64,000 bases of DNA. It comes from Mizuhopecten yessoensis (taxonomy: Eukaryota). The notes under the pieces are model-generated. The model saw nothing but the letters and a program-made list of their open reading frames with translations, was not told the origin of the DNA and searched no databases. Location: NCBI RefSeq assembly GCF_002113885.1, contig NW_018408899.1, forward strand, positions 457,988-521,987, read 5' to 3'. Below are positions 4,525-26,987 of this stretch, in pieces; the stretch's first letter is position 1; every line of letters begins with the position of its first letter. The translations under genes were made by a program, and so were the position numbers.

Positions 4525-5370
4525 ATGGTAAAGACTGACAATGTTGAAGAAGTTGGAGTTAATATATGCGGGGTAGATAGATATCTCGATGGAATAGACA
4601 TCAACAACAGCTGCCGACGGGTGTATCTGAGGAGGATGGAATCTATTGAGGAATGTAAAAGGTCATCATCGACAGATGACGCAGAAAAACAGTCAACATC
4701 TATTGGAGCAGCCCTGGCACGACTTAGAACGGAGATGGTAAGAATTAACATCACAATAAACAAAATTGCGATTGATGTTGTTTTGTAATGTTGTTGACAG
4801 TAACCGAGGAAACAAGTGACGTAATTGATAAAAACATTTTTTTTTAAATCATAAAAGTACTAATGCAAAAGTTAAATACCAGATACATATACCAATGATT
4901 CAATACCAAAATATTGTTAAAAAACCTTTTTAATATACAGAACTATCAATATAACCTTGATTAACAACAGTGTCATTCCTTTATCTTTGAAGGTTGGACT
5001 AATGGATCAGGACGCCGGACTGATGCGACAGATGCTGATCCTTAACGAGAAAGTGGAGGAACTAAAGGCAAACAACATCTGTCAGATGAGCAAGGAATCC
5101 TTGGATAGTTATGACAGTTTATATCTGATGGAAGGACAGACAGCCAATCATCTTCTGGAGAGCAAAGATAGTCTCTACCACACGGACGAACAGTCGGACG
5201 ACTTATCATCTGATGAAGAAACATTTCAATGTTCTGATTCTGCTTACTCTGATTCAGACGAAGATAAATGTAATATTATCTCCCAATCACGTGATTGCCT
5301 GACTTCTCGAAAGGAGTCTGAGTCGTTGGATTCTGTTTTCGACAGTTTGCTTGAGTTTGACACTATGTGA
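4525..5370 (+). CDS. LURAP/FAM89-like coiled-coil adaptor, copy 1; exons 4525-4737 + 4993-5370, 196 aa
   Basis: Exon 1 ends ..LARLRTEM|gtaaga and exon 2 starts tttgaag|VGLMDQDAGLMRQMLILNEKVEELK. The phase-0 splice joins two track ORFs. The junction and protein are conserved in five other copies. The motif resembles the LURAP1/FAM89/FAM167 core (ALxxLRxEMxxLxxxDxxLxxQLxxLNExIExxK). Confidence 0.85.
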
Positions 5371-5531
5371 CACAGTGATCTGACATGGAATCTAACAGAA
5401 ACCGTTTTACACTGAAAATGGTATCACTTGTTCCCTGATGTCTCCATACAGAGCCCAAACAATGACGTCTATATGAAGACTTTCGGAACAGCGCAAAAAC
5501 AGAAGATGGTCTTAATGATTATTATTAAAAG

Positions 5532-5728
5532 GTAATTTATACATTCAAACTTAAATATATGCACAGTTGAATAAAACATATTTCAAATATAATTTTGAGA
5601 ACATGTAAATTACACCTATTCCTTAGAATTACATCTATTCTTTATTAACTAAATACTATTTTATATACTCCCTGTATATTGTATTATATAGTATTTTAAT
5701 AAGTGTTACACTATTTGTATATTTTCAG
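5532..5728 (+). other. Predicted 3' UTR intron of copy 1; candidate polyA signal AATAAA at 6067-6072
   Basis: aag|gtaatt ... attttcag|aa; positionally equivalent to the clearer 3' UTR introns of copies 3-5. Confidence 0.55.
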
Positions 5729-8700
5729 AAACAGATCAACAACTCGAATTGCAAACAGGCTCGTCGTGGATTGACACACACCATGTGATAGCGCAATTGA
5801 AAGCCTCTAACAGTGACTGAAAGTATGCATTAGAGGGTTCATTCTTACTGAACCAATGCATTTGTCATCGTGTGTTAAATGACAGGAGTGAACAATAACG
5901 GACGAACTCAAAACGATGATGATAATTAAACTGTGGTCTACAATGCAATTTTGCATTAATTATGAACAGTTGCTAAGAGGGATACTCTATCGTTATCCAT
6001 TAAAAGAAATCCATTGCGTTCGTTGTTTTGAAAACAATTGTTCCATACTATTGTATCATCTGATCAAATAAAATACTACACACAACATTCTACGTCGTAT
6101 TTTGGTTTGTATCAACAAATCATATTGGACTGGAAACCATTTGAATTACATTTTTAAACTAGATGCAACGGAATAAGCATTAGTGTAGGTAGTTAGAAAA
6201 TATACATAAACTCGCTTATTGTATAAACATAATAAACTGAACAATCATTATTTTTCCACATTGTATAGTTTATTTTGAATTCGTTCTAATTATCTGCCGA
6301 TTTCCAATATGCTCAAAAAATTTCTTGACTCAACGAAGGTAATTGTGTATGCAGAGAGAAATTCAAATATATAAACGTTTTTTTTTTCAAAATACAATTT
6401 TTGGGGAGATCTTGAATCTTGTTTGTAGCGTATGATCTTAAGAACTGATATAATTAACGTTCAGAAATTCCGGCCGTTTTAGCATCCTACAACATATAAG
6501 CTGCGTTTGAAAAGTATACTTAAATTTAAAATTAATACAAAGATTTTTTTTTTAACCGGATGAAATATTTGCTGACTGATGTGATACACCTTCGAACCCA
6601 TCTCTATATATAAAGTTTTAAGTTTAATTTGATTGAATTTTCGAATTTTGATCTAAACAAAAAATATTATTTGCTGACCAATATTTGACGGTATAAGGAA
6701 CTCCACATTTAATCAGTGGTACATGTACAAGAGAGGGTAACATAAAGAGTCCCTGTAATAACAATTACATTTTTTTGGTGGAAATATATCGACCGCAAAA
6801 AAGCGAAATATAGAAGCACGAGAAAGAGAAGCTTAAAAATATTCGTTTATTTAAATCAATTATTATGATTGCATTTTTTCTGACTATTGCATTGCTATAA
6901 TGGAAATTTAATAATCCGTTATATATGTAAAACAGTTGACTAACACCGACTTTTTGTTTCCGAGTTTCTATGATATTGAAACTGGATTGACATTGTCAAG
7001 GAAAGAAACAATATATATGTACAGGTTGGAAGTTGCAGGAACCTAAACTGGTCAACATGTAGCTAGAATATATATTGTACGCAACAATATCAATTGTTGC
7101 ATAATTCGTCGTTAAGATATATCTAAAAATCTCTCCTATATATCTAATGCCGTCACTTTTGGCATTAACTCTTTTTATTCAATTTATTGTCTTTTGATTT
7201 CGAATGATACAGATGAATGAATGAATTAATCAATCAATCTGTCGCCACTGCACTGATTATAAAAACGGTGGTTGCATTTGAAATGACAAACAACGATCCG
7301 AAGTCGCAGTTCTACAGCAAAATAAAACTACAATGATATTCAACTATAGATACAATAGATGTTCAATGATGCACTAATTTTGTCATCAAATCAGTTTCAT
7401 TTCAATAATATTTGCATTAAAGGAGTAAAAGCGAATAGTCATTAAGATATTGATGTTAACACGAAAATTGAAGGATAATAAAGCGTTATTTTGATAAAAC
7501 TGTAAAACCAATGCATGCACAAACGATGCGTCATAATAGAAGTTTAAATATTCAGTGGCATACAAAATTAGTGGTGTTACCGGTAGTATGTAAGATCGCA
7601 TTGTTTTCCGGATTGATTCGATTATTTTTCAATCGTTACTGATGTGTTTAGCTGCAATGTTATATTGACTAAGGAAACTCATCATTGCTGCTATAGATAA
7701 TTATTGCCATTGTCAGTTAGAATGAGCGATATTACATAAATTGTTTGTCGCGTCATGACTAATTGGAATGAATAAAACTATTATAAAACGTATATGTTTA
7801 ATACTTATTACTGCTTTATCCTTCTTTCAACATTGCCGTTGATTTGATTTCATTACATGATATGCAAGATTCAAGTGGTAAACGTCAAAATTCTTGAGTA
7901 ATTTATTTTGGATTTTTTTTTGTTCAACCGAATGGTATTATTTTTAAGATTCATTTTATCTTGCATTATTTTCTTCTTTTTGTAAAATGCAATGACGAAA
8001 ATAACCATTTCGAACCATATCCAATATACGTATAAATTGTCTTCTATAACCCCAACCTCCGCTCCGTTGGTGAACCCCTTCGATGTACATGCGGGGTCCC
8101 AAAGTATGTCTTTTTCATGAACGGTTTTTTGACCATAGTTGTTAAATATTCTCCATTGCTGGCGTTGCTTTAACTCAGGGGTAATCGGCATGGCATTATA
8201 AATAGCTCACGTGGTGTCGATTAAAGGTAATCATGTAAAAGACATTCTACCAGTAAAAATATATGTCGTTCTTAATGAACCAGACCTCCACACTACTGTT
8301 TTTAACACCAAGCCATTTGACGAGCTGTCAATATTGTTTACGGTCATTAGCATTCTATGTCGACCTCATCGATGGTTTTGTCTCCTACTTGGGTCGGCAT
8401 CGACATTGATAATATCCAACAGATATTAATTCCAGCAGGGACAGGACTAACAATTTTACATAATTATGATGTCGACAAGCCGGATACCTCCTGGATGATG
8501 ATCAATCCAATAAGCAGTGAGCTCCGAATGTGCAAAGGTTATCATTTTTTTATTGAGCATAAATTAGAGCATATATCATTAGACTTCATGTAATTATAAT
8601 AATATATAACCATTAAATAGATCTTGCAACAGTGCCACAAAACATGTGGTTCTTTCTCCTTAACTTATTATCAATGTATATATATATTTTTAAATACGTG

Positions 8701-9296
8701 TTACAAATCATAACTATTCCATTCCTTCGAAATAGAAGATACTACGGTTCAATCTATAGCTTAGCTTTATATTCTAACAACGGATGTAAAATGAAAGTTG
8801 GCCCAATTAATGATGGCAATAGTTTGCTCTTGATATATATCTCTAGTGTTATGTCGATTCTTTCTAGTATTTAAATCGTTCTGAACCGTCCTTTTATGCC
8901 GCTTTTAAAAAAAGAGTGAGGAATATAACTGCCAGAATAACAGAGAATAGTTTGCCGCGAATCCATTGTAATATATTGTCAGAAAACTGTCGTTTAGTTA
9001 GACAACGTTCGCTTGACATGCCATTTGATTGGTTAAATTATAGCATACGATTGTTAACACACGTATTATCTACACGCTTAAAACCACAAGGAAAATACTA
9101 AAAAACATTTTTCAATATACTTGTGTCACACAAAGAGGTTCAATTTTCTGGTGCAGCTTTTAATTCATCAGGATGGGAATTTAAAAAGCATTAAAATGAA
9201 TGTATCTCATTTTGCTATTTTTAATTCCTACAAAAAGAATAAAAGCATGAAAAATATGGAGCTAGTTCGAATAAAAGAAAATGTACCAATCTTTAA

Positions 9297-11474
9297 AGGG
9301 GCATCACGCTGAAGTAACTTTTTTTTTTGTCTTTTTTCCAAATACTACATAAACATATCAAGTGAGGCTCCTTATGGAAAATGCCGATCGGATTTGGCTG
9401 AAATAGATTCATAAAAATGATTAAATCTAAGATAATCATCGGTATTTCTACCTGTCTGACCAACGTTTTGTTCAGGGATTTCCCTCTACTAGCGCATGCG
9501 CATAGCACACCATTTCTTTGTAAACAAAATGACTGGCCGTGTGAAGTAAGCCAAAGAAAAGTGTTGTACCGTGTCAGCTACGAAGCGAATAGTTGCCAAA
9601 TGGTCAAAAGATAGCGCAAGGGGTACGTTACGGAATCATTATTGCCAGTGGGAAGTATTCAAAGCAGAAAATAACTGCCCTAGCAGTCAGTACGGTGCAT
9701 GTTTTCTTCCGGATAGCGGCCGGTTAAGCTGAAATAAAATCGACAGAAATGCTAGCGCTGTTTATGTTATGAATAAATATCTAAAACTATTAACCTCGCT
9801 AGTATCATTGTGTGAGTTTGAACACAGATGAACTTAGTTTAATATGTTAATGGGCATGTATCGGAGAGAGTTTACTTTGTGTTTTTTATAATTATACAGT
9901 GGTTTATGCAAACGAAAGGGATAAGTGACTGGTTAGTTTGATTTTGCCATGAGGCCCCCCAAGGGATAACTGCTGTGATGGCCACGGCGTATTCTGTTCT
10001 CTGATCCTCTGTCGGTGCTCGGGGTCAAATGAGATACGTGCGCTATTAGATTTACATAATTTATAATATTACCGGGATCAGTAAAATGGTATGATTTAAT
10101 TATATTGCTGAATTAAACGATTGTTTTTTGTTTTGACATGCAAGTTTTAAATTAGTACTAATATAATACCCGGCCTGCCCTGGCGCGACGACGCAATATA
10201 TAAAAAAAAAATCGCTCTTCGTCAGAAAGCTACGTTATCGCAGCTAGATTAAAAATGTCAAAATGACGGACCAGGATGAATAACTGAGGAAGGAGAACCT
10301 ACTTCTAGTAAATAGGATCGCATAACACTTTTTTTTTAAATCGTAATTTTTCAACAGTTCATGTTTTCATATGATGTTGACTTAGAATGTATGATCATGT
10401 AACAACCTTTTCTCTATAAAGAATAAATTTTCGACTTCAGATAGAATCGGAATACGTATTGAAAACAGGGGAAAAAATATTTGATTACGTTATAAAAATG
10501 GCGCGTGCTGCCGATAACTACGGCTTCTGTTTCGGACCAAAGGAACTGATTAAAGAAAAGTTGTCTCAGCATAAAAAGGTCCATTTAAAAGTATGCTTTA
10601 ATCTCTGTAAAGTATTGAAAAAATATAATTATCAAGTATCTCAACACGTTCCTTATTGACACATATTCTACATGTACACGTAGTGGTTTTGCCATACAGT
10701 TTATTGTGTGTGATGGTTAATATGACTTCCTAAATGTTAGCGTTTGGAGACAGTGAAAGTGGGAAAGAGAGTATACATAGATTTATATTCATGGTCTAGA
10801 AAAAAAATGGCCAAAGACATTGAGTTGTTTAATGTAATAAATAAATTCACAAACGTTTCCTTTTTATATTCGCGTGTAGTTTGTCATTGCATATATGCAC
10901 TTTATGTAAACATTTGAAAAGGGATATTCGTCTCGTGAATATTCCTTTTTACAGAAAGGTTTGTCCCATTGTTGAGGGAGTGTTTAGCCCCGTACCACCT
11001 GTACCGGTCACGGGAGAAGGCTGTGATAAATTGTAAAAACTTGTGCCCCATCCTTTGTTTAATTTTATTGGCAACAGATTTATGTTAAAAGCTAAATAAA
11101 TTTAAATTCTTAATATTGGCAAGTGTGCAATTAACTTCTGATGATGAATAATTACTGTTCAATAAGTTTGAATACGGAATTAGAAATCATATAACTTGGT
11201 TTCATAGTGCGGTAAGAAGTTGCAGTTGCCTGACGGCCCCTCTCCGAGGGCCCCTTTGTAAACCGTTTCATCTCGCTCGCACCACTTGTGTTTGCTGCCT
11301 AATCAGGTGACGTTATCGGCGCTATTTTTAGCCGGGCTTTCCCGAACAATTCAAGTGGTCAAACTGGACATTTGGAACGGACTATGAATATGGGGATAGC
11401 GAGGTAACATAAGTGGAAGTGCATACAATACATATATTCATTAAAAAAAAAACGCCTTTTCACGTGATGTCCCT
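9297..11474. mobile_element. Non-autonomous TIR DNA transposon with TTAA target duplication (Kolobok-like termini)
   Basis: TTAA|AGGGGCATCACG ... CGTGATGTCCCT|TTAA (11/12 inverted match, with T and A tracts inside each end); no transposase ORF. Confidence 0.6.
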
Positions 11475-11793
11475 TTAAATCGTATGCATCCATTTTACAC
11501 TCGAATATTTTATAATTGCCCCTCTATATATTTAATAATTCCCGGGAGGTTACTTTAATGAGCATCATTGATTCTATTGTGTGTGTTCCATGATTGCGTA
11601 AGAACAATATGAATCACCCCTTCCAAAGCCGGGGTTCCCCTACTGTGCTAAATACAGATGCATAGAATAATTCAGGCCAGGACAGATGAACACACAGAGA
11701 CCCGAAAAGTATCTATATATATATATATATAGGAAACAATCCTATTAACACAGAAACATCGTTAGGAACTAGATAAAGAAAGAACTATTCACC

Positions 11794-12470
11794 ATGGTTA
11801 AAGTCAAAGAGGATAAGATAAACCAGTGTGCTACACACAGATATTTGGATGCTAGTGATAAATAACAGCTGCCGACAAGCGTATCTTAGGAGAATAGAAT
11901 CTATCGAAGATTGTAAAAAGATCAAGATTGTCAGTTGTTGCTGATGTGCATACAACATTTGTCGGTGCAGCTCTGTTGCGTCTAAGAGAAGAAATGATAT
12001 GTTTATCATGTATTTACAATGATTAATTAAAGGAATCACATAAAACATTTTTGTCTTTTTGTATAACAAAAGATGAATTTTCCATTCAAATTACTATCCT
12101 CACGTCACTTCCTCATACAACATTTGTTTGTTAACTTGTAGGTGGAACTGATGGATCAAGACACCGGACTGATGCGACAAATGTTGATCCTGAATGAGAA
12201 GTGGAGGAGCTGAAGGCTAACAATCTCTATCAGATGAGCAAGGAATCCCTCGACAGCCAGGAAAGTCTGTATCAAGCGGACAGACAGACAGACAAAGACT
12301 GTCTGGAAAGCAGATATAGAATCTACACGGACGAACAGTCGGACGGAATATCGTCTGATGAAGAAACAATAACAAATTATAAATATGATTCTGCCTACTA
12401 TGACTCAGACGAAATTACGAGTAATGTCATCTACGGATCAAGTAAATACCTTTGTTTACGGGAAAAGTAA
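11794..12470 (+). pseudogene. LURAP/FAM89-like copy 2, pseudogene; exon relics 11794-11996 + 12142-12470
   Basis: Homologous peptides NNSCRQAYLRRIESIEDCKK, GAALLRLREEM, VELMDQDTGLMRQMLILNE and EELKANNLYQMSKESLDSQESLY lie in different frames (shifts near 11860, 11930-11950 and 12200). The intron donor is mutated to ATATGT. Confidence 0.85.
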
Positions 12471-15400
12471 AACAATTACTTCTATTCGAGGAATCAAAGC
12501 AAACCCCGGTTAGATTCGAGATGGAGTAATTTGTCCTGACGCCACCATGCAGTAACATAACAATAAGTTCGGTTTGGGTAGCAGGACGTAGAACAGACAT
12601 TTGTCAAAGGTAAATATACACATTGACACTCACTTTTGTTAAGTTCTAAGGTTCTTTAGGTATTCTTTTACGAATTGAGATAAGGCATAATACTGTGTGA
12701 ACAAAGTTGCCTTTCTATTTATATAAGGCGGTATTTGGTTTAAGATGCTGAACATTTTCTAAGTTTTCATGATCATAAACAAGGGAATGCATTTATTGAT
12801 GTTAATTAACTATTGTACCAAAACATATTGGGTTCTACAAATAAATCATAGTTTCGATCGAATATAGTTACAGTATTATAATGTTAAACATCTGTATTGA
12901 ATTGAATTGGAGATGACATGCTGTAATAATGATATGTTAAATGTCACCTATTCAAATCTGGAAAATTTCAATGTCTTTATTTATTTTGTGCTTTCAGGAG
13001 CATGCTACATACATGGGACGCAAAACAAGGTAGGACATCTTCCAGAAAATAAGCAACATCTTGAGTGTTTAGTAAGACATGCAAAGTCTTCACAAATGCA
13101 TTTATGGCATATTTTGCTTTGAATGACATATCAAAATAATATAATGGAAACATTTATTTCCAAACGACTTTGAAGTTCCCGATGGAGTTTTATGCATTCA
13201 ATGGATAGTTATCACAAACTGTTTCTGATTCAATAAAACAGATATTGCCATATAATATCGGCCACATAGTTATCAATGAAATATTTTGATGAAAATACGA
13301 AACAAAAAAGTAAACAATGGAAACCCTTACATCAAAACCCCTTATTAGTTCATCATTGACATTTTTATGCATTCAATTGAATGTGTTCTGGTTGAAAAAT
13401 TACAGACTGTTTCCGGTTCAATCAAAACTGATATAACAATTCAATATTACCGTATTCGTCAACAAAGAAATATTTTGAATAAAATGGTTTTAAAGTGAAG
13501 GAGAGAAAAATGAAACACTTAACTTGTTCTGTTCACATAAAAATAACAACCGTTTGTAAAATCTTTGTATGTAAGAGTTTATAAATTTCCACCTGATTGA
13601 TTCCTTAAGATGATTAATTTGAGTTCATTTTTACCTATTTTTAAATAACATTGATAAAAAAAACAATCAAACAAGAAAATTATTAAACATGCAATCATAA
13701 TCAAAATCAAATAAGATAGGAAATCGTATGGCTATAGATTAACATACATTGATAATAATAGTCAAATTAATATTGGAAATTGCATTGAGTTAGATTTAAA
13801 ATCATATTATCTTACTTACTGGGCAATCAATGCAATAAGGTTTTACAGGGTCAGACTAAGCCTTTTAAACTGGGCCCAGTTGCATCAAGCACAATTACTG
13901 CAATAACATATTCAAGCAACACTTTTATACTAGGTTTTTCATATCATTATTAAAACTGGAAACAAAGTACGTAAATTACAGAATGTATTTACCAATCCGA
14001 AAAATCGGATTTTTTGTTTCAACAGATGCTGTAAATAAAACAAAAAAAAACCCTGAATGAGGCCAAAACGCTCAGTATAAATTGGTCCTGATCATACATG
14101 TAACGTTTGTTTGGTACTGTGTCCTAATGTTACTTATGAATCCACGGGTAAGCGAAACACAACAACTGCAAAATTAATTGATTTCACGAGAAAAAAAGAT
14201 ATGAGAAATAAACATATTGATATATGAAAATAAATCATTCGCACAAAACAATTAAAGTAATTTATTTAATAGAGGCGAATTCTACTTGTTATATATGATC
14301 AGGATTTCGTTCTAAGTAATACTAAAGATCACACATCCCTTCGCAGTATAAACTGTTTAGGATAACGACGCGTGTTACGTTTACCTTACAAAAGCTTTCT
14401 ATTGTGTGTAGTTGTTTATGATCCATTGAACTGTAAGTAAGTGAATATAGACAAGAAGAACAGGGCTACCCCATGCTAGGTTAATTATGACAATTACAGG
14501 TAATTAGCAAAATATTGCTTTTGTATCACGTTATTAGTGAAACCAATTAACCTGATTATACGACCTAAATCACTGTATTTTTATGTTACGAGGAGTGCTA
14601 GACTCAGCTTCAAATGAACCCTTTATCCTAAAATGCAAATTTTGATTGACAATGCGTTCAATTGGTTTCGGATTTAGAAAACCGTATTTAAGATATTTAT
14701 TGACATTAGAATGAACTTACTGCGCCAATGCTTACATTCAAATATGACCAAGGTAAGGGCAAATCTTCCCAGCTTTTCAGTATTGTGTATTTCTTTATTG
14801 GATGAATTATTTAAAAAATAAGTCACAACCCAATACATGAACCATGGGGTTTTAACATACAAGTCAGCCAGTTAATACATTTTTGTTAATAATGTTCTGC
14901 ATATAAAGGCTATTTAGTTCATGGCTACATACTCAAAGGAACCTACTTCCTCATCCAACGGACAAAATCTTAAGAAACTTCCGATGTTTAGACAAAAATA
15001 ATAATAAGGGAACACAAGAAAAAAAAAAGAAAAAAAAACCAGGCATCAGTTGTCTCCAAAAACGTTGGAGGCTGTGCTTAGTGCTTCGAAACTAGTTTCA
15101 TGTGCATTATGTGGCGGTCGTCATAATATCACGCGTTATCAATTATCAAAGTCTTAGTGACCAATACAATCGGTATGTTGTTTTCTTCTTGACTGTTTAT
15201 CCTTTGTTTGCATACGTTTTAAGTCCAACACGTCATCAATATATCATACACAAGACTTTCCCCTCATGTGCAACACCCTGTCAGTGCTCAAAAGTACATT
15301 TACTTTGCATAACAAGTTTCAATAAATTCTCTACAGCAGCCGTGGGGAAAACTGATGAAAATATCATTGTCTATTATTTCATTGCATATCTACCTCGGGA

Positions 15401-15618
15401 ATATGTTTATCTAAAAAGCAGAGCCTACGATTGACATATACGTATCAGCTAATTTATATATGATATACTGATTGTAATTTCTTTTGTTGAATGCGACTTA
15501 TTCTGTTATGTGATAGTTTTAACTTTCTATAGTCTTTATTAACATTTGTGATTACTTCTGAAAACATTTTCTGCCGTTAGAAACTGTAAGCAAGTTTTGT
15601 CTCGCTTTTCGATGATAT

Positions 15619-15679
15619 GATCCATCCATCCATCCCATCTGCATCCGATTCCATCCCATCCACCCATCCATCCATCCAT
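15619..15679 (+). repeat. Imperfect (CCAT)n microsatellite
   Basis: tccatccatccatcccatc... directly visible. Confidence 0.8.
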
Positions 15680-15889
15680 ATTCAAAATCGTACATCAAAA
15701 CATTTACTATTTAGTCCATTTGTAAATTAGTCATTTAAATGTCATTTGCGTTTTTCCTTGGCCACATTTATATAAACATTGGTAAGGTAAGCCTTTTAGT
15801 ATATTTATCATGCCATATTTCCAATTGGTCACCTAATTAAGCATACGAATATGTACCACCTACAAGGCACTAAATGTCATTGTCTGAGA

Positions 15890-16246
15890 CACATGTAATT
15901 TAATAGCTCCATGGTGGTCTCATTCCCTCTCATTAACGTTCATGGTATAACTTATAATTACGTACCCAGTGTGGGAGAACATCAGGAGAGCCATTTGGCT
16001 TTTGTTTTGCTCACATAAATTATTGTTAGATCACATAGAGCGAAAATTATTTTCTTTTTTGTAAAAAACAATACTTCGAGTACTCCTGGAGTGAAGGTAT
16101 TCATAATTGTACCACACAGTGGATGTATAATACTACCCACGTGATACTTATTTAGTATAAATATGTCAATTCGCCTTGATTTAGACACTATAGCTAAACA
16201 AACTTACCATAACTGGAACTAGTAGGAAATATATATCACAGTCATT
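15890..16246 (+). promoter_or_regulatory. Conserved promoter and 5' UTR of copy 3 (CACGTG 16138-16143, TATAAATA 16156-16163)
   Basis: The block ATAGCTC..TGGTGGT..CATTCC ... TGTGGGAGA ... TATAAATATG ... ACTGGAACT is alignable with 20160-20496 and 24310-24645. Confidence 0.7.
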
Positions 16247-17034
16247 ATGGTTCACACAACAGAACTAGACGTTACCAGTGGTCCAGCAAATGTTGTTGAC
16301 AGATGTTTAGATGGAATAAACATCAATAACAGTTGTCGACAGGTGTACCTGCGGAGGATGGAATCCATCGAAGAATGTAAAAGAGCAACGAAGAAAACAG
16401 ATACTCACAAAACAACATCCACCATTGATGCCGCTCTAATGAAACTAAGAATCGAAATGGTAAGCATCATAATTTTGTACAATGTATTGGTGACATTATT
16501 GCTATTATTTCATTATCAATCTTTATTGACTGTTCGAATTATATATATATATTCGGAAAGTAATAGAACATATTGACTATACTTTTCTTTTGTTCTCAGG
16601 TGGATCTTATGGATCAAGATGTTGGACTGATGAGGCAGATGTTAATCCTAAACGAGAAAGTCGAGGAACTCAAGGCCAACAACATCTGTCAGATTAGCAA
16701 GGAATCCCTTGACAGTCAGGACAGTCTGTATGAAGAGGAAGGACAGACAAATAAATACCTCATGCAAAGCCAGGACAGCGTGTACCACTCAGACGAACAG
16801 ACAGACGAATCCCTGTTTGATAGCAAGGAAAGTCTCTACAACATGGAGAAAGAGACAAGCAAACTCTTAGGGGACAGTGCTGATAGTTTATACCAGACTG
16901 ACGGATTCTCATCTGATGAAGAGAACAGTGATGCATGTGATATCGAAAGGTCGGTGAGCACAACGGATTCGCAGCCTCACCTTTTATCATATGACTCTTT
17001 GTTTGAAAAGTTGCTTAACTTTGACAAAAAATGA
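16247..17034 (+). CDS. LURAP/FAM89-like copy 3; exons 16247-16459 + 16600-17034, 215 aa
   Basis: ..LMKLRIEM|gtaagc ... ttctcag|VDLMDQDVGLMRQ; frame open; homologous to the other copies. Confidence 0.88.
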
Positions 17035-17223
17035 AACAGACGACATCAATAGAAACACAGGTATCCCAGCTGTTTAAAACATAATCGAGTATATAGATAG
17101 GCGATAAAATGGTGATATTTGACAATATAGTCGATCCATTCCGACATCACCGATGAAAGAACAAGACGGGATCATTTATCATGGAATGGACGAAAAAGGA
17201 TCATCTAAGAATGAATGTAACAG

Positions 17224-17487
17224 GTAAGGATTTTTTTAAACATATGTTAACAACACATAAAATAATATTAAAAATAACTATAGTAATTATTTTTTCAATC
17301 ATCATAGTTTGAACAATATTTTACATATTTCAAAATTCCTCTTCCATATACGCAGTCAAAGTCTACGGAACTCTTTGCTTCAGACACAAATAAAACTACA
17401 TAGATGTGGAGTTTTAGCTTTTTATGACTCCTGAATATGGACTTATGGAAATGAAATAATGACCTTGAATTATTTTATATTTTTCAG
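17224..17487 (+). other. Predicted 3' UTR intron of copy 3; AATAAA at 17865-17870
   Basis: cag|gtaagg ... tttttcag|aa; flanking exonic sequence aligns with copies 4 and 5 while the intron interior is more diverged. Confidence 0.7.
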
Positions 17488-20159
17488 AACACTTGGAGAT
17501 TGAAAGATACGTCAAAGAGTGAGTGGAGTGCTCCCCGGGAACCGTCATGATGTTGAATGACTGACATCCGCTGTGAAAACAAAGTAGTTATTTTTGCAAT
17601 TGTTGCAAAATAGAAATTCAAAGTAAAATCATTTCCAGACCATTCAGTTAAAAACGAATATTGTTCGTGAACTTTGTGAATGGATCAGAAGGCATTTGAA
17701 TAGAACTTGTTAACGATCAGTATAATCATCGTTAGTGATAATTTCAATGGAATGTATATCATTCCCTCTCACCTGATGTAGCAGACACATTCTATTGTGA
17801 TATACATTATCTTAAACAAGATTGTACATTTCTAACATGACATTTGAGTATTGTTTTGAGCTACAATAAAAAAATATCAATGTGAAACGCGTTTTTACTT
17901 ATCAGTTCCTTGCTGCTATTTCACATAATGCTACTATATTTGGGGCCTTATTTTGAACTGAATATTTTGTCATCCTGGTGTTGATGAAAACTGTTTAATG
18001 TTTAATCACATCAAAACATCTTATTTTTTACCTTTGGAACAAATGGGGTTGATAATGGATGAAGTACAGTTTAAATACACACCCTGTGAGTCAAATAATA
18101 TAATAAAATTTGTAGTTCAGTTTTCTTGAACTAAATAAGTATTGTTTAATACGACGTTGATAAATGTATTAATAACACATTTAGATATTCGGAAAACCAA
18201 ACGAGGTTTAAAAATTCAATTTACTCCTAATAAAATAGCCACCGCTGCATCATTAATACTGAGCTGCTTTAGATATCGCGATCACTCTACTGAAATCACA
18301 TATTTAATTTTATGTTTTACATCACTACATGAATACGACGCTAAGCAGGAAATGTTTAAAAATGTAATACTTAAAGTCATATACGTGTGACAGGTGGCAA
18401 AATTTCACAAATCCGATTTAATCACAAATTGTAACTACAATGTACTTTTCTTGATTCGTATGTTTCTTCCGATATTTAGTTTTTGAAACAAATTGTTTCA
18501 TTATGACAATGTGTGCTAATAAGAGTGACACCATGGAATGGCCAGCAGTGTAGTAAAACAGAGTGGTCCTGTAAGGGAAATTGCAGATATATAATGGTCT
18601 GCCATAGGAACCTGAATTTGGAACAAAATGCCGCATGTATTTCTGCAAGGGAATCATATAGGCTCCTTTTGTATATATTTGAACAGCTAAATGGGTGTTT
18701 TGTGGTTTGTTACAGATAGTTATGTTACAATGATCTCAAATACAATAATTTATATTAACCCTATAAGTAAATTCGTTTTGAAACATGCATAAAACAGCAA
18801 AAAGAAATAATTTCAGTGCCCATGTCAACCGTATTACTTTGTATATACTCTCGACCTCTGCTCTTTAGATGAACCCATTCAGTGTGCAAGCGAAGTACCT
18901 ATTTATTCTTTCTTTATTGAATGGTTACACGCACTGTAATGTAGTGCTAATATGACTCCAAAACTGACAATTCTTCATCCTTTGTGATATTAATGTTTAT
19001 TGACGAGTTAGGACACGCGTTGCCGATATCAGTCAATCATGAAAGAGCGATTCTATCAGGTCAAGTCAATGTCGTTATTTATACTACAGACCTCCTCACT
19101 AGTATTTTAACACCTTGTCTTCCGACGAGCTGTCACATACGTTAACGGTTATTGTTAAAACAATTGTAGTGATATGTCCACCTCGTTAGCGGTTTTGTAT
19201 TTACTTTAAACGTTTTTAATAACACATGTATCGGTTTTGAAGCGCTGGAATGTGATGAATAACCTAACATATCATGTCGAGAATTCAAAGCCCTCCCAGA
19301 TGATCTTTAATGCACAAGATATATACACGACTTTAGAATATTTTAGTTATGTTTGTTACTTTGTAGCACCCTGTTTTATTATCAGCCTTCACGGAAGCCT
19401 TCCTCAAATACTTATTATAATTACACGAACCCCAAAAGTAAACTCAAGTTATTTTCCTCATTATTGTGCTACTGTTCAAAAATAATCTTGAGTTTTTACC
19501 GTATTTCTATATAAATTAAGTATCATATAAAAAAAAAACCGCCATTGCAACTCTGTACCAGTTATTCTTTTTCTTCAGAAAAGTTGATAAAAATAAAGTT
19601 ATAACTCTTTGTATTCTATAAAAGGACATTAGCGATAGGGAGTTTTAACTATACATTCACCTTGCTACTGTATGGTACATGGAAGATGTATAGGTCATGT
19701 TAAGTTAATGAGGCTAATTAACTCTATTGTCTCCTCTGATGGAATTTAGATAAAGGAAACACGTTTTCCCATTCAGGAGCTCACCTACTAAGATAAATGC
19801 CGGTTGTGTCAAAAACAGGTCAAGATAGAAAAATCACTACACATTTTTTTTTGAGGCGGAGGGGTCGCTAAATTGCACATACACAATTTCAATTTCAAAG
19901 TGACATAAATTTCATAGGATTAAAATACCCTGTTTCGAAATGGTTCAGACAACAAGATCAACATTGCAGAATAAACCAAAACAAAACTGCCTGCTTTAGA
20001 CAAATGACTGGACATCATTGGCATCAACAAAGTTTTTAACCAAACTGTGACGTTTTAACTGTACAAACCCTTCGTGTTTTTTCGCGTCATATGATACCCT
20101 ATTAAAGAATACAAGAACCCATCTACGTGATACTATGTATTTTAACTGGGACAAGTGTT

Positions 20160-20496
20160 ATCGTATAGCTCTGTGGTGGTAACATTCCTTCTCTTTAACA
20201 TTCACGGCATAATTTAGAATGACGTATACGATGTGGGAGAGCACCAGGAGAGCAGTATGGCTTTTCTTTTGTTTCCAATCATTATTAGATCACATGGATC
20301 GAAAATTACTTTCTTTTTGTTTAAAAGCAATTATGATAGATCACCTGGAGCGAAAGTAGTGTTAAGTTTACCAGACAGTAAATATAACACGTGATGTTTT
20401 AGTATAAATATGCCAATCTTACTTGACTTAAACATTATAGTGAAATACACTTCTGTACTAAAGTACTGGAACTGGATTGAGATATACGAAAGCATC
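20160..20496 (+). promoter_or_regulatory. Conserved promoter and 5' UTR of copy 4 (CACGTG 20388-20393, TATAAATA 20403-20410)
   Basis: Alignable with the promoters of copies 3 and 5. Confidence 0.7.
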
Positions 20497-21509
20497 ATGG
20501 TTCACACGACAGAAGTAGACGTTACCGTATGTCAATCAAATGCTATCGACAGATGTCTAGATGGAATAGACATTAATAACAGTTGTCGACAGGTGTACCT
20601 GCGGAGGATGGAATCCATCGAAGAATGTAAAAGGTCAACGAAGACTGATACTAAAAAGGCAACATCAACCATAGATGCCGCTCTGATGAAACTAAGGACC
20701 GAAATGGTAAGCATTAATATTATGTTCCGTGTTTCGATGTCTTCTCTTTGTTTTTTGAAAATGAGAAAAATGTGTACTACCTACATGTTTGTTTATATAA
20801 ACTAGACTAACAAAAGACATCGTCATCGATTTTATAGACACCTCGTACACAATTTACACCTTTGTTTGTAATCGCTTCATTTGTCATTTGTCTGATGAAG
20901 GTGACACTGTACATATCGTACTAGTCATCGCAACGTCACATCGAAAATGTTATTGGTTGTGTAAAAAGAACTTCTCATAATCCGTACTTACCAACCTGAA
21001 GAAAATGTTAAAAAACAGATTAACAAAAGTTATAGAATGTGTTGCTAAAACTTGCTATTCGTTTTTCTTTTCAGGTGGATCTTATGGACCAGGATGCAGG
21101 ACTTATGCGACAAATGTTAATCCTGAATGAGAAAGTTGAAGAACTCAAGGCCAACAATATCTGTCAGATGAGCAAGGAATCTTTGGATAGCCGAGAAAGT
21201 CTGTACGAAGTTGACGAAAATGCACATAAACTCTTTACACAAAGCAAGGACAGTCTTTACTTCTCGGACGAGCAGACGGACGAATCCCTGTTTGACAGCA
21301 ATGAAAGTCTCTACAACATGAAGAAACAGACAAGCGAACTCGTAGGGAACAGCGTTGATAGCCTATATCAGTCTGATGAATTTTCATCTGATGAAGAGAA
21401 CGTTATTGGTGATATTAAAAAGTCTGTGAGGAAGACGGATTTATTGCCTGACATTGTATCATATGATTTTTTGTTTGAAAAATTGCTTGACTTTGACGAC
21501 AAAATATGA
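20497..21509 (+). CDS. LURAP/FAM89-like copy 4; exons 20497-20706 + 21075-21509, 214 aa
   Basis: ..LMKLRTEM|gtaagc ... ttttcag|VDLMDQDAGLMRQ; frame open. Confidence 0.88.
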
Positions 21510-21700
21510 CGACATGCTATGCAACTTAGGACACAGCTACCCCAGCTGTTATAATCCAATCCGATGACTCCATTATCGGTTTAACTGATAATTAAGGACA
21601 ACATAGACGATCCATGGCGATGTCAGCAATGAAATAACAAACAGGGGTTATTTCTCTTAGAGAGGACGAAAACAGGACAATGGTGGACTGAATGTAACAG

Positions 21701-21985
21701 GTAAGCAGTTTAAATCAGTTACCTTGAAATGAGGTATCTCTGGTAGATTTGTTTCGACATGGATAATATTAAGTTTATTCTTGTTGTTAATGTTTCAATT
21801 AAGGAAATTTGTATAAGTCATGTTTAATGCATTTCTGAATAACCTTTAATAAAAGCGTTCCTATTCTACAATGTTATACGTACAGCTACGTAGAAATGTA
21901 CTAAATTAAAAAGCTACACGTAACACTAATATTAGAATTTAGGACTGAAAATGATTAATGACAACTATTTACTTCTCTTTTTCAG
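21701..21985 (+). other. Predicted 3' UTR intron of copy 4; AATAAA at 22418-22423
   Basis: aatgtaacag|gtaagc ... ctttttcag|aa. Confidence 0.7.
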
Positions 21986-22754
21986 AATGCATGGAGATGG
22001 CATCACATGTCCGTGAATGAGTATCAGTGCTCTCTAGGGAATCGCCATGACGTTAAAAGGAACGAGATTCCCTGCAAAAGACGAGTTGGACGCAAAATAA
22101 GAACTAAAATCAAACGAATTCCTGAACTATTCGATTACTATTGGATGTTGTTTACGAGCTTTGTGCCTAGATCAGTCGGTTTTGTATGCAACTTCTCAAT
22201 ATTCCTAGAGCGTGTTTACGTGGAATTACGCTGATAAAGACGACTCAATGTATTCATGATGTTTAGACTGTTTACGGTTTATCGAATCACTGTTAGTATG
22301 AACTGCAATGGGATGCATATCACTTTCTATCAACTATGGAAGCAGAAACATTCTATTTCGTAATTTCTATTTTATCATATATTGTTAAATTAACGACATT
22401 TGTGTTTTTATGTTTATAATAAAATTGATTGATGTCAAAACATTGGCCTTATTTGTAATTAATAATAAACAGTTGGTGTTTAATTGAATGAGAATATAGT
22501 TGCAGCTTAACTTTAGGGATAACTATTTTGCAAATGCCGCTGGCATATTTCAATATTACAAAGGCACTGCAAAAGTTTCATTGGCTACATATTCAATAGA
22601 TAAACCACTAAAACAAAATCAAAAACAATCTTTTTAAATATGAATATAACCTATTTAAATATTACCAATGACTTAAGTGCTACAGAAGCAGATAATTCAG
22701 TATTGTTACACGAAGTCAGGGAGGATAAAACTAAGATATACACAAACAATTAAA

Positions 22755-22955
22755 TTCGCTGTAGGTGAAAACAGGAAAGAAAATAGGGGTATAGGAAAAA
22801 AAGAAATGATAACGATAAAGGGGAAATGGAAAGGAAAACGATAAACGAAAAAAACAGAAAAAGATAGCGAAGGGAACATGAAAAAAGGGAAAAGGAATGG
22901 GGCAAAGGTGAATACAGTAAATGATAGCGGTATAGGAAAAGGACAGGAAGGGATA
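22755..22955 (+). repeat. Purine-rich degenerate tandem/low-complexity tract
   Basis: Recurrent GAAAAAAGAAATGATA(A/G)CG..AGGG-like units; nearly all A/G. Confidence 0.55.
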
Positions 22956-24309
22956 TATTATGATAACTGAGGGAGCAAATACATTATCGTCCTTTCAAGG
23001 AGCCTGAAATATGACATAGAAGCAACATCTTTATTTTCGTAAGAGAATCACATAAGTTGTGTCTATAACAGAAGCTATGCAGAAAAAAACAGCGATATTT
23101 ATTATTTCTTCCAAAACTGCCTATAGTGAAAAAATTAAGCAGTTGGCAGAAGATATTATGATGTCATCAATTCTATCATAATATATTGAATTCATATACT
23201 TCTACAACACATATAAATGGTAATATTTATCAAGAATAATGTGTGACATATACGTCTCACGGAGTGCTAACGTGACAAAGAGAGATACTTTATTTCTGGT
23301 ATTTAACCAATTATACCTATGGGGTATACACAATTATCTAATTAGCCATTACAAACAATACACACCACACATAAGCATGCCCATTGTCGAACAGACTACG
23401 GCGAAGAAGAGTGTCAAGCTGGTTTCCTATAGCATAATGCTAAATTTGACTACAGTTTTGCTTTAGCAAGCAAAAAAGGATTTCTCTAGAAAACAAAATG
23501 ATTCGGAATAAGAATCATCACTCTGGTATTGTAATTACACGCTTTGTAAATAAAACTATTTGAAATTGTTTTGAGAACGTTTGCGGTCTACATACAGCTG
23601 AAAACAACTGACTAAACAGGTGTGGGCCAAGACGGCGAATTCAATAGACAAACGTTAAAATCGTATCGAGAAATTGCCCCTTAATGGAAGAAAGGAAGTT
23701 AGAATGGGGTTACAGAAAGGTTTCATTTGGTGTACCCTATTTTTTTTATTCTCTTGTCCTATTAGTAAGATGCAATTTTTATTTTTCAATGTCCATTTAT
23801 CCCCGCGCCTTTAGTTTGTCTTTCCACGATTGTACTTTTCTGATTTTACTACCATACCATATGCTCTTTTCTATCGGTCATTTCCACGCAGCCTGATCAA
23901 AACTCGTTCTGGAGCTATGATATCATTATTCATTTATCAAATTTCTTTTTATAGAAACAACAAACACTAATTTCCTTTAACTTATGAACACATTCAGAAA
24001 CCGGGTGCTTTCATATAACACGCTTTCTAACTAACCAAACAGAATTCTAAGAAGTTTCGATCGATCGTTCGTCCAAGCTATTATCAATCAGCCAATTAAT
24101 CAATTAGTTCCAATACATCATAGTAATCAGCAATTTATATCGAATTTTTAATTTGTCTATTCGTCAAGAAAAGCGCTTTGCATTCCCTGTTATGTGTGCA
24201 ATGTCAAACATTATTTATATATTTATTATGCCATATTTTCTAAATGGTATTGTACACTATCATAAGAAGATCAACCTACAACGCAACACATGTGATTATC
24301 TAAGTTACA

Positions 24310-24645
24310 GGGCATGTGATAGCTCTGTGGTGGTCTCATTCCCTCTCATTTGCATTCATGGCATAATTTGGAAGGCGTTCGCACTGTGGGAGAACATTCC
24401 GAGAACAATAGCACTATTCTTTAACTACAATCAATGTAAGATCACCTTTGGCGAAAATTACTTTCCTTTTGTTGAAAACAATATATGTTCAGGTCACCTG
24501 GAGCGAATATATTCTAATTTCACCATACAATGCGACACCGTGTGGTACCCATTTGGTATAAATATGTCTATCCGACTTGGTTTAACCACTAAAGCAAATC
24601 ACACTTACCAGAACTGGAACTAGATTGAGATATACGGCAGTCATC
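24310..24645 (+). promoter_or_regulatory. Conserved promoter and 5' UTR of copy 5 (TATAAATA 24557-24564)
   Basis: Alignable with the promoters of copies 3 and 4. Confidence 0.7.
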
Positions 24646-25528
24646 ATGGTTCACACAACAGAGCTGGATGCTACCATTGACAAATGTCTAGATGGAATAG
24701 ACATCAATAACAGTTGTCGACAGGTATACCTGCGGAGGATGGAATCCATCGAAGAGTGTAAAAGGTCAACGAAGAAAGAAGCTTCTCACAAAACAACATC
24801 CAGCATTGATGCTGCTCTGAGGAAACTAAGAATCGAAATGGTAAGCATCATCATTCTGTTTAACATTTGATATTATGATGTTCTATTTTGTTCCTACGAA
24901 TACTAGATAATCAGACAGAAGGTAACATAATTCATATTGACATAAAATAAAATGTTTTAAAGCATAGGTCCATGATGTAATTGAATATTTTATCCAAATA
25001 TTATTTAAACAGTTTATATTATACATATCTTCTTTGTCACTTAAGGTGAGTTTGATGGATCAGGATGCTGGTCTGATGCGACAGATGTTAATCCTAAACG
25101 AGAAAGTCGAGGAACTCAAGGCCAACAACATCTGTCAGATGAGCAAAGAATCCCTTGACAGCCAGGACAGTCTGTATGAAGAGGAAGGAGAGACAAATAA
25201 ATATCTCATGCAAAGCCAGGACAGCGTGTACCACTCCGACGAACAGACAGACGAATCCCTGTTTGACAGCAAAGAAAGCATTTTCAACATGGATAATCAA
25301 ACTAGCGAACTCTTTCGGCACACCGCTGATAGTCTGTACCAGACCGATGAATTCTCATCTGATGAAGAAAACATCGATATTTTCGATGTTGTAAAGTCTG
25401 GAAGTAAAACGAATCCACCGCCTTTTGTTAACAATAGATGCGTCAGTTGTCAAAAGAACTTAGTTGAGAAGTTTGTCTCATATGACACAATGTTTGAGAA
25501 ATTGCTTGATTTTGACGACAAGATATAA
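24646..25528 (+). CDS. LURAP/FAM89-like copy 5; exons 24646-24840 + 25046-25528, 225 aa
   Basis: ..LRKLRIEM|gtaagc ... cacttaag|VSLMDQDAGLMRQ; frame open. Confidence 0.87.
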
Positions 25529-25720
25529 AGACAGATTACGTTTATTAGGACAAACAGGTATCCCAGCTGTTCAAATCCAATCGGATTCCTAGATAAACCA
25601 CTCCAGTGTCGATAATGGACAATATTGACGATCTATCCGTCGATGAAGAACCGCCAAGGATACTTTATCCCGGAAAGGAAGAAAAGCAATAACTGCAAAT
25701 TCTACTGAGGAATGAAGCAG

Positions 25721-25988
25721 GTAAGTTTAGTATATATAAAACAATGACGATTTACACATGAAGTAGTAACAATTTAATTCTATTTGACATTGTTATCTCA
25801 AGTGAGTCGGATTTAGGTATGTTAAATGCATTTCCCAATAAAGCTGTCAATACATTTGCGCCTATCTTTAAAAAATATTTTAATAAGATATTGACTAGAT
25901 TGGTAAGTTTAACAATTCAACTTTGATATACACATTTTAAACCTAAAGGAAACAATAAATAAGAATCATTTACTTTTATATTTTTCAG
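25721..25988 (+). other. Predicted 3' UTR intron of copy 5; AATAAA at 26399-26404
   Basis: aatgaagcag|gtaagt ... tttttcag|aa. Confidence 0.7.
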
Positions 25989-26987
25989 AATATATGAAGT
26001 TGGTGTCATCGGCAATGACTGAGGGGTAGTGCCAACCATAGCACTCCAATTACTAGACTGACATCCTCTGTGAAAAAACAATGGGGTGGTCCTTTTTGGA
26101 ACTGACGAAGATAAAGACTCGAAATAAACGAACTGCTGGATCATACAGTTTCAACTTGACAGTGTTCGTGAACCCTTTCCAATTGAACTTCCAAATATAT
26201 TTGCGGAATTGTTACTCGCAGTCTTGCTGATATGGACGTTGTTCTGTGTTTGTAATATTTAGACAGTTTACAGTTAATGGATTCACGGCTGCTATGAATA
26301 CAACTTATACAATTTTTTGACCTCCCACCTTTTCCTTGTGGATATTATATTAACTAATACAATTTGTATGTGACATTTGAAATTTTATGCACTGAAATAA
26401 TAAAAAAAATAGTAATCAGTACATAGTTGCTCCGAGTTCCTATATATATATAGCTTTACTTTGAAATGGGCAATTATGCCATTCCGATGCTATTTTGTAC
26501 TATTAAAAATAGATATTTTGCGTTAAAAACGTCTGATCAATTACATGTTTAATAGGTAATCTTTCAATAAAACAACAAGAAAACTGTTCGTTTTAGAATG
26601 GATATATATTGTGATACAGTTGATGTATTTGCTGCGGCTAAAGTGATGCAAAAGATACTATAATTCAGTGTCCTTATAGGAAATAGGCATTATAAAGCAG
26701 AACTTCAGGGAAAGTTGATAAACGACTTACAGATAATCATTTAATAATATGAAGCATGTACTTAAACATTGCGGTAGATGATCATAAATTATAAAATAAA
26801 GATTTTCATATAAACTTTTAGAGATATTTAGGTACCAAATAGTTTAATAAAAACAAATCTGTTAAAATAATGGATAAACAATCAAACACTGATGACAATT
26901 GAAAGTTATTTTTCTAATTCCTTTTGGAAAAGGAAACTTAACAAAACCATGTAAAAAAAAGGATTAAATCAATCCTTTTTGGTTTCA

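What the first reader, a model, noticed from the sequence alone, without database searches (positions are those of the whole stretch)
5371..25988. Conserved intron in the 3' UTR, far enough from the stop to trigger NMD
Seen: strong donor/acceptor pairs 161 (copy 1), 189 (copy 3), 191 (copy 4) and 192 nt (copy 5) after the stop codon, plus a candidate in the pseudogene (12610-12997). The last exon has no shared ORF and ends at AATAAA. Known: an exon junction more than 50-55 nt downstream of the stop marks mRNAs for EJC-dependent NMD, used deliberately by genes such as Arc. Inference: translation-coupled mRNA decay limits output to bursts. Copy 6 seems to lack this intron, giving a natural control.
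Basis: partly seen in the sequence, partly recalled or inferred. Interest (0 to 1): 0.72.

Follow-up and report, generated by a model that had tools for sequence, protein, structure and literature searches.

The report
Conserved 3' UTR intron, scallop gene family
A tandem family of small LURAP-like genes in the Yesso scallop really does carry an old, efficiently spliced intron 140-190 bases after the stop codon, but this is a known kind of gene architecture, and the idea that it triggers mRNA decay could not be tested here.

Summary
The window is Mizuhopecten yessoensis (Yesso scallop). It carries four intact genes and one pseudogene of a fast-evolving LURAP-like family, plus a slower paralog (copy 6).

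- **RNA evidence.** Exon depth is about 37-40 and intron depth about 2. One poly(A) RNA read crosses the copy 5 junction.
- **Copies 1, 3 and the pseudogene.** They have the same G|GTAA...TTTCAG pair and the same drop in G+C, but they have no read evidence.
- **Conservation.** Six orthologs in Argopecten irradians have the same pair 139-161 nt after the stop. The surrounding UTR and intron sequence has diverged to randomness, so the intron predates the split of the two genera and its splice sites are under constraint.
- **Copy 6.** It has no conserved pair. Its 3' UTR is collinear and 78% identical between the genera.

The NMD and translation-burst reading is untested. EJC and UPF3 genes are present in the genome, I found no mollusc NMD data, and the spliced mRNAs accumulate. 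This is a new member of a known kind, of low to moderate interest.

The parts
4525..4737 (+). Copy 1 (LOC110466581) coding exon 1
   Evidence: Exact mapping of database protein P0005 onto the window
4993..5531 (+). Copy 1 exon 2: CDS 4993-5370 (stop 5368-5370) plus 161 nt of 3' UTR up to the donor
   Evidence: No read evidence for this copy
5532..5728 (+). Copy 1 predicted 3' UTR intron (197 nt, GTAATT...TTTCAG, G+C 0.20)
   Evidence: The acceptor context is shared with the A. irradians copy-1-like genes
5729..6090 (+). Copy 1 predicted last (non-coding) exon, AATAAA at 6067
12136..12609 (+). Copy 2 pseudogene exon 2 (one-base loss in the conserved helix, early stop at 12468-12470) plus UTR up to the candidate donor
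12610..12997 (+). Copy 2 pseudogene candidate 3' UTR intron (GTAAAT...TTTCAG, G+C 0.28)
   Evidence: Sequence only
16247..16459 (+). Copy 3 (LOC110466617) coding exon 1
   Evidence: P0002
16600..17223 (+). Copy 3 exon 2: CDS to stop 17032-17034 plus 189 nt of 3' UTR
17224..17487 (+). Copy 3 predicted 3' UTR intron (264 nt, GTAAGG...TTTCAG, G+C 0.25)
   Evidence: The 0.29-0.34 share of words in runs X1-X14 fits three expressed genes
17488..17885 (+). Copy 3 predicted last exon, AATAAA at 17865
   Evidence: Similar to the last exons of copies 4 and 5 (z 6.6-10)
20497..20706 (+). Copy 4 (LOC110466661) coding exon 1, counted from the conserved MVHTTE start (the NCBI model starts at 20410)
   Evidence: The junction 20706/21075 is seen in an X1 contig
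21075..21700 (+). Copy 4 exon 2: CDS to stop 21507-21509 plus 191 nt of 3' UTR
   Evidence: One continuous X1 contig piece, 21074-21697
21701..21985 (+). Copy 4 3' UTR intron (285 nt), shown to be spliced out
   Evidence: the joint skips 285 nt, GT..AG, depth 37, against depth 2.1 for an intron-retaining contig
21986..22440 (+). Copy 4 last exon, AATAAA at 22418
   Evidence: The contig covers 21983-22312. The end is predicted from AATAAA
24646..24840 (+). Copy 5 (LOC110466601) coding exon 1
   Evidence: The junction 24840/25046 is seen in an X1 contig and in 2 X24 reads
25046..25720 (+). Copy 5 exon 2: CDS to stop 25526-25528 plus 192 nt of 3' UTR
25721..25988 (+). Copy 5 3' UTR intron (268 nt), shown to be spliced out
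   Evidence: the joint skips 268 nt, GT..AG, contig depth 40, plus one raw poly(A) RNA read
25989..26420 (+). Copy 5 last exon, AATAAA at 26399
   Evidence: The contig covers 25986-26341 and X24 reads reach the last bin. AATAAA
32548..33990 (+). Copy 6: slower-evolving LURAP-like paralog. CDS exons lie within 32548-32760 and 32986-33438. It has an uninterrupted 3' UTR of about 530 nt with a conserved AATAAA region near 33965
   Evidence: No RNA evidence

Best explanation
Copies 1-5 are a scallop-lineage tandem expansion of a LURAP-like adaptor gene. Each has two coding exons and a third, non-coding exon.

The intron before that last exon lies wholly in the 3' UTR. It is removed efficiently, which is shown for copies 4 and 5. 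It was inherited from the common ancestor of the family, before Mizuhopecten and Argopecten diverged and before the copy-1-like and copy-3/4/5-like subfamilies split.

Its splice signals are kept by purifying selection while the UTR and intron sequence around them has been randomised. The simplest reason (inferred) is that splicing is needed to reach the functional last exon and poly(A) site and to skip the AATAAA hexamers inside every one of these introns. No special adaptive role for the intron is required.

As a consequence, every mature mRNA carries an exon junction 139-192 nt downstream of its stop codon. If scallops use the EJC mode of NMD, these mRNAs would be natural, partial NMD substrates. 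I put that at roughly 40%. I put deliberate burst-limiting regulation at about 10%.
For: - **Spliced contigs.** They have exact GT..AG joints at the predicted places, with exon depth 37-40, intron depth about 2 and intergenic depth 0. One poly(A) RNA junction read also crosses the copy 5 junction.
- **No retrocopy.** No processed retrocopy in the genome could mimic the joints: the own-genome search finds only the copies in this cluster plus one distant paralog.
- **Shared architecture.** The donor and acceptor pattern is the same in all five M. yessoensis copies.
- **Orthologs.** The same pattern occurs in six A. irradians genes, 139-161 nt after the stop, with introns of 235-274 nt.
- **Divergence around the sites.** Between the species, and between copy 1 and copy 3, local alignment of the UTR exons and introns is at shuffle level (z about 0-2). 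Within copies 3, 4 and 5, UTR exon a scores z 15-24, the last exon z 6.6-10 and the intron only z 1-3.
- **Composition.** Intron G+C is 0.20-0.28 against 0.33-0.42 in the UTR exons, every intron has an AATAAA, and the last exons share no ORF.
- **Machinery and literature.** UPF3, Mago nashi and Btz genes are present. The EJC mode of NMD is reported in plants, fungi and animals (PMC6173133).
Against: - Copies 1 and 3 and all A. irradians genes have no transcript evidence; their introns are inferred from sequence.
- Run X1 is only guessed to be RNA by its record, although its exon-only, intron-skipping coverage says that it is.
- Only one raw read crosses a 3' UTR junction.
- Transcript 3' ends were not seen.
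- The pseudogene also keeps good splice sites, so persistence alone is weak proof of selection over short times.
- Nothing here measures mRNA stability, so the NMD consequence is pure inference. NMD in Drosophila and C. elegans depends little on the EJC.
Confidence: 0.62

Rival explanations
1. The 3' UTR intron is maintained because it makes these mRNAs EJC-dependent NMD substrates, so each mRNA gives only a short burst of protein, as in Arc.
For: The junction lies 139-192 nt after the stop in every copy and in both genera. The splice sites are conserved although their flanks are randomised. EJC and UPF3 genes are present. The EJC mode of NMD is widespread. Arc and zebrafish precedents exist (PMC5934489, PMC7310861).
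Against: There are no stability data and no mollusc NMD literature. The spliced mRNA is the abundant form. Introns are inherited passively by tandem duplicates, and their splice sites are constrained for ordinary reasons. Nothing indicates inducible or burst-like expression of these genes.
Confidence: 0.12
2. The intron acts positively. Splicing of a terminal intron, and the EJC it deposits, enhance 3'-end processing, export, translation or localisation of these short transcripts, without NMD.
For: Splicing is efficient and the spliced mRNA accumulates. The splice sites are conserved. Arc 3' UTR splicing is reported to have antagonistic effects that include a positive one (PMC5934489 title and abstract).
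Against: Each gene already has one coding intron that can provide the benefits of splicing. Copy 6 does without the 3' UTR intron. There is no direct evidence.
Confidence: 0.13
3. The intron is a switch between splicing and intronic polyadenylation. Use of an AATAAA inside the intron gives a short-UTR isoform, and splicing gives the long isoform with the last exon.
For: Every one of the five introns has at least one AATAAA or ATTAAA, while the upstream UTR exon of copies 3-5 has none. Low-depth contigs extend from the exon into the intron of copy 4 (21699-21858).
Against: AT-rich introns (G+C 0.20-0.28) contain such hexamers by chance. No poly(A)-ended reads or clustered ends were reported (table 6: none). 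Intron depth is only about 5% of exon depth.
Confidence: 0.08
4. The feature is not real. The joints come from a processed retrocopy, a DNA deletion allele or an assembly artefact rather than from RNA splicing.
For: The record of run X1 does not state that it is RNA.
Against: The joints are exact GT..AG. The same contig also skips the coding intron. Intergenic depth is zero. A raw poly(A) RNA read shows the same joint. No retrocopy is present in the genome.
Confidence: 0.02

Closest known systems
Genes with distal 3' UTR introns (50 nt or more after the stop) in their principal isoform, such as vertebrate Arc and SRSF4. PMC7310861 lists 582 such genes in zebrafish, 489 in human and 649 in mouse.
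   Same: The intron lies wholly downstream of the stop. The junction is well beyond 50-55 nt from the stop. The intron is constitutively spliced, and its position is conserved across species.
   Different: NMD sensitivity is demonstrated for the vertebrate examples and is untested here. The host is a mollusc, where I found no data on the EJC mode of NMD. The feature is shared by a whole tandem paralog family rather than by a single gene.
LURAP / FAM167 / FAM89 leucine-repeat adaptor proteins (Pfam PF14854, PF11652)
   Same: They share the conserved helix (LR.EMV-LMDQD..LM.Q.L.LNE..EE.K). The coding intron splits this helix at the same place in copies 1-5 and in copy 6. The A. irradians ortholog of copy 6 carries a recorded PF14854 hit.
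   Different: Copies 1-5 score below the Pfam cut-off (13-22.5 bits against 25). They have their own acidic tail with repeated (D/E)S(L/V)(Y/F) motifs and a C-terminal FEKLLDFD motif. They were found only in the two scallop genera.

Membership tests
Distal 3' UTR-intron gene (structural class) | The intron lies entirely downstream of the stop codon of the main ORF in the mature transcript's precursor | tested here: met
   One contig runs unbroken through the stop (21507-21509) to 21697/21700 and then joins 21983/21986. The same holds for copy 5. The ORF end (FEKLLDFD..) is conserved in both species.
Distal 3' UTR-intron gene (structural class) | The exon junction is 50-55 nt or more downstream of the stop | tested here: met
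   161, 189, 191 and 192 nt in M. yessoensis; 139-161 nt in A. irradians
EJC-dependent NMD target (Arc type) | The organism has the EJC core and the UPF3 bridge | tested here: met
   Matches above the Pfam cut-off in the window's own genome to Smg4_UPF3, Mago_nashi and Btz. This shows the genes are present, not that they act this way.
EJC-dependent NMD target (Arc type) | The EJC mode of NMD operates in this lineage | not testable with these tools
   No mollusc NMD study was found. The review PMC6173133 lists many lineages as uncharacterised.
EJC-dependent NMD target (Arc type) | The transcript is stabilised when translation, SMG1 or UPF1 is inhibited | not testable with these tools
   No such data set could be reached.
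EJC-dependent NMD target (Arc type) | Inducible, short-lived burst expression | not tested
   Only steady-state depth was seen. Depth is near zero in three raw RNA runs and 37-40 in X1 contigs.
LURAP (PF14854) | Score at or above the Pfam gathering cut-off (25 bits) | tested here: not met
   Copies 1-5 and their A. irradians orthologs score 13.3-22.5 bits. Exon 2 of copy 6 alone scores 18.5 bits. The full-length A. irradians ortholog of copy 6 has a recorded hit.
LURAP (PF14854) | Homology to a bona fide family member over the conserved helix, with a shared intron position | tested here: met
   hhalign of the family alignment against copy 6 gives probability 96.6% for exon 1 and 93.4% for exon 2. 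The coding intron falls after ..EM in all copies.

The most novel reading that the evidence does not exclude
The intron has been kept for a very long time, since before the two scallop genera split, because it makes a whole family of adaptor mRNAs constitutive EJC-NMD substrates. That would be the first documented, selected use of 3' UTR-intron NMD in a lophotrochozoan, with an intron-less paralog (copy 6) next door as a built-in control.
Probability: 0.1. Interest if true: 0.6.

Novelty: new member of a known kind. Interest (0 to 1): 0.3.

Why it matters
Whether the exon-junction mode of NMD is ancestral in animals is still argued. It is clear in vertebrates and weak in flies and worms, and I found no data for molluscs. 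A tandem family with a verified junction far downstream of the stop, next to a paralog without one, is a convenient natural test set for that question in a bivalve.

It is not unique, however. Any scallop gene with a distal 3' UTR intron would serve, and vertebrates have hundreds of such genes. The structural fact itself is ordinary gene annotation. The NCBI transcript models for these loci may already show it, which I could not check.

Tried and rejected
- **Transcript contigs for copies 1 and 3.** An exact-protein look-up gave nothing on record. The single read-laying run had gone to copies 4 and 5, so copies 1 and 3 stay unverified.
- **Relatives outside scallops.** The word search with one protein and then with a 9-sequence profile returned only the same nine M. 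yessoensis and A. irradians proteins. I did not run the large exhaustive protein search, because the claim does not rest on the protein's family.
- **A 3' UTR intron in copy 6.** A GTGAGT at 33663 and a CTTCAG at 33780 looked possible. I rejected the pair because the donor is not conserved in A. irradians and the interval between them is as conserved as the rest of the UTR.
- **Global identities per segment.** These were uninformative because lenient gap settings give a background of about 0.55. I replaced them with local-alignment z-scores against shuffles.
- **A coding last exon or hidden downstream ORF.** Rejected: no shared ORF.
- **Literature.** There are no papers naming the four LOC identifiers and no mollusc NMD experiments.
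- **Joined models.** I built and searched no joined (spliced) model of my own. Exons were searched by reference and database proteins by id, so that joined step is left out.
Full report
**What the window is**

Protein look-up identifies the window as Mizuhopecten yessoensis, the Yesso scallop. Exon 2 of copy 5 is 100% identical to LOC110466601. Copies 3, 4 and 1 are LOC110466617, LOC110466661 and LOC110466581.

ORF and repeat scans show a head-to-tail array on the + strand:
- copy 1, about 4525-6090
- a frameshifted pseudogene, about 11850-13250
- copy 3, 16247-17885
- copy 4, 20497-22440
- copy 5, 24646-26420
- a more distant paralog, copy 6, 32548-33990

Each gene has two coding exons. They are split inside a conserved helix, after ..LR.EM and before V.LMDQD.

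Pfam gives only sub-threshold hits to LURAP and FAM167, at 13-22.5 bits against a cut-off of 25. Profile comparison nevertheless ties copies 1-5 to copy 6, with 96.6% probability for exon 1 and 93.4% for exon 2. The A. irradians ortholog of copy 6 has a recorded LURAP hit. The family is therefore a divergent, lineage-restricted expansion of a LURAP-like adaptor gene. In the window's own genome it is confined to this cluster, plus one distant paralog about 110 kb beyond the window's end.

**Checking the observation**

| Copy | Stop to junction | Donor | Acceptor | Intron length |
|---|---|---|---|---|
| 1 | 161 nt | AAAAG\|GTAATT | TTTCAG\|A | 197 nt |
| 3 | 189 nt | AACAG\|GTAAGG | TTTCAG\|A | 264 nt |
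| 4 | 191 nt | AACAG\|GTAAGC | TTTCAG\|A | 285 nt |
| 5 | 192 nt | AGCAG\|GTAAGT | TTTCAG\|A | 268 nt |

Each acceptor follows a T-rich tract. The pseudogene has a GTAAAT...TTTCAG candidate at 12610-12997.

**Transcript evidence**

In run X1, held as Logan contigs:
- A 1056-nt contig at depth 37 lies on 20604-20705, 21074-21697 and 21983-22312.
- An 867-nt contig at depth 40 lies on 25207-25717 and 25986-26341.
- Both downstream skips are GT..AG with the cut shifted by 3. The junctions are therefore 21700/21986 and 25720/25989, exactly as predicted.

The copy 4 contig runs unbroken through the stop codon, so the intron is in the 3' UTR of the main transcript. Contigs that retain intron sequence have depth about 2, and the intergenic bins have depth 0.

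The record of X1 does not say that it is RNA. Exon-only coverage that skips both the coding intron and the UTR intron shows that it is. No retrocopy in the genome could imitate the joints. In a raw poly(A) RNA-seq run (X24), one read crosses the copy 5 UTR junction and two cross its coding junction. Expression in the three raw runs is otherwise near zero, so the genes are probably tissue-restricted.

Their introns rest on three things: homologous splice pairs; a drop in G+C from 0.33-0.42 in the UTR exons to 0.20-0.28 in the intron, seen in all five copies; and, for copy 3, the 0.29-0.34 share of sampled words held by 14 runs from 5 studies. That share is what three sets of exons, rather than two, would give. 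This last point is inference.

**Conservation**

Argopecten irradians has the orthologous array (loci L001 and L002).
- Three nearly identical genes of the copy-3/4/5 type have AAGCAG|GTAAGC 139 nt after the stop and TTTTGCAG| 235-237 nt further on.
- Three genes of the copy 1 type have ATAG|GTAATT 154-161 nt after the stop and TTTGTA.ACTTTCAG|AAACA 237-274 nt further on. This acceptor context is the same as in M. yessoensis copy 1.

The rest of the UTR and intron has diverged to noise, both between the genera and between copy 1 and copy 3. Local-alignment z-scores against shuffles are about 0-2. Within the younger group of copies 3, 4 and 5, the first UTR exon scores z 15-24, the last exon z 6.6-10 and the intron only z 1-3.

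Three conclusions follow. The intron is older than the split of the two genera and of the two subfamilies. Its splice signals are constrained. The UTR exons evolve more slowly than the intron.

**Copy 6 as a control**

The 3' UTR of copy 6 aligns collinearly with its A. irradians ortholog at 78% identity over about 530 nt, up to a conserved AATAAA region. The only plausible donor, GTGAGT at 33663, is not conserved, and the interval it would remove is as conserved as the rest. I agree that copy 6 lacks the intron, although no RNA was examined for it.

**Interpretation**

The junction meets the positional rule for EJC-dependent NMD. Several points are compatible with that reading:
- The review PMC6173133 reports the EJC mode in plants, fungi and animals, including later work in flies, and calls it probably ancient. 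It also notes that many lineages are uncharacterised.
- The scallop genome encodes UPF3, Mago nashi and Btz/CASC3.
- Vertebrates have roughly 500-650 genes with distal 3' UTR introns in their principal isoforms, many of them NMD-sensitive (PMC7310861).
- Arc is the classic example of burst expression (PMC5934489).

Against this, I found no NMD experiments in any mollusc. Nothing here measures decay. The spliced form is by far the most abundant form detected.

Tandem duplicates inherit introns passively. Splice sites of any intron are constrained, because retention would here expose intronic AATAAA hexamers, present in all five introns, and cut off the last exon.

My best reading is therefore an ordinary, old, constitutively spliced 3' UTR intron. 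I give about 40% to a measurable NMD consequence and about 10% to selected burst-limiting.

**What was left out**

Exons were used by reference and database proteins by id.

**Verdict**

It is direct for two copies and comparative for the rest. This is a new member of a known kind, of low to moderate interest.

Noticed in passing
L003:2033-2256 (- strand) = G000:C5572, near 631500-631750: A distant LURAP-like paralog about 110 kb beyond the window's end (exon 2 at C5572:632226-632546, - strand) also has a candidate 3' UTR intron: AAG|GTAGCT 359 nt after its stop and TATACTTTCAG| 224 nt further on. If real, the 3' UTR intron may be older than the copy 1-5 expansion and may have been lost in copy 6.
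   Followed up: partly
window:33436-33990 against L001:18210-18700: The 3' UTR of copy 6 is 78% identical and collinear between the two scallop genera, whereas the 3' UTRs of copies 1-5 are randomised. That is strong constraint on the UTR of the slower paralog.
   Followed up: partly
window:20850-21049: A dispersed repeat sits inside the coding intron of copy 4. Its depth is very high in all four runs (up to 757 in X1), reads run on into many different flanks, and joints link opposite strands. It looks like an abundant, transcribed, hairpin-forming mobile element.
   Followed up: no
window:49843-53199 and window:54597-55882: There are two satellite arrays: a C/T-rich 59-nt unit (about 50 copies, extreme GC and AT skew) and a 30-nt unit (about 42 copies).
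   Followed up: no
window:20410-20496: The NCBI protein model for copy 4 (P0003, 243 aa) starts 29 codons upstream of the MVHTTE start that all other family members share. This is probably an over-extended start.
   Followed up: no
window:25046-25528 and the family alignment A2: The tails of the proteins carry repeated acidic (D/E)S(L/V)(Y/F) motifs and an invariant C-terminal ..F(E/D)KLL(D/N)FD.. motif, which suggests short linear binding motifs. Copy 5 and A. irradians P0004 share an extra Cys-containing insert before that motif.
   Followed up: no
L001:531-1016, 5807-6289, 10327-10806: A. irradians has three nearly identical units of about 4.5 kb of the copy-3/4/5 type, including their UTR introns. 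This points to very recent tandem duplication or gene conversion, independent of the M. yessoensis copies.
   Followed up: no
I did not examine it.
   Followed up: no
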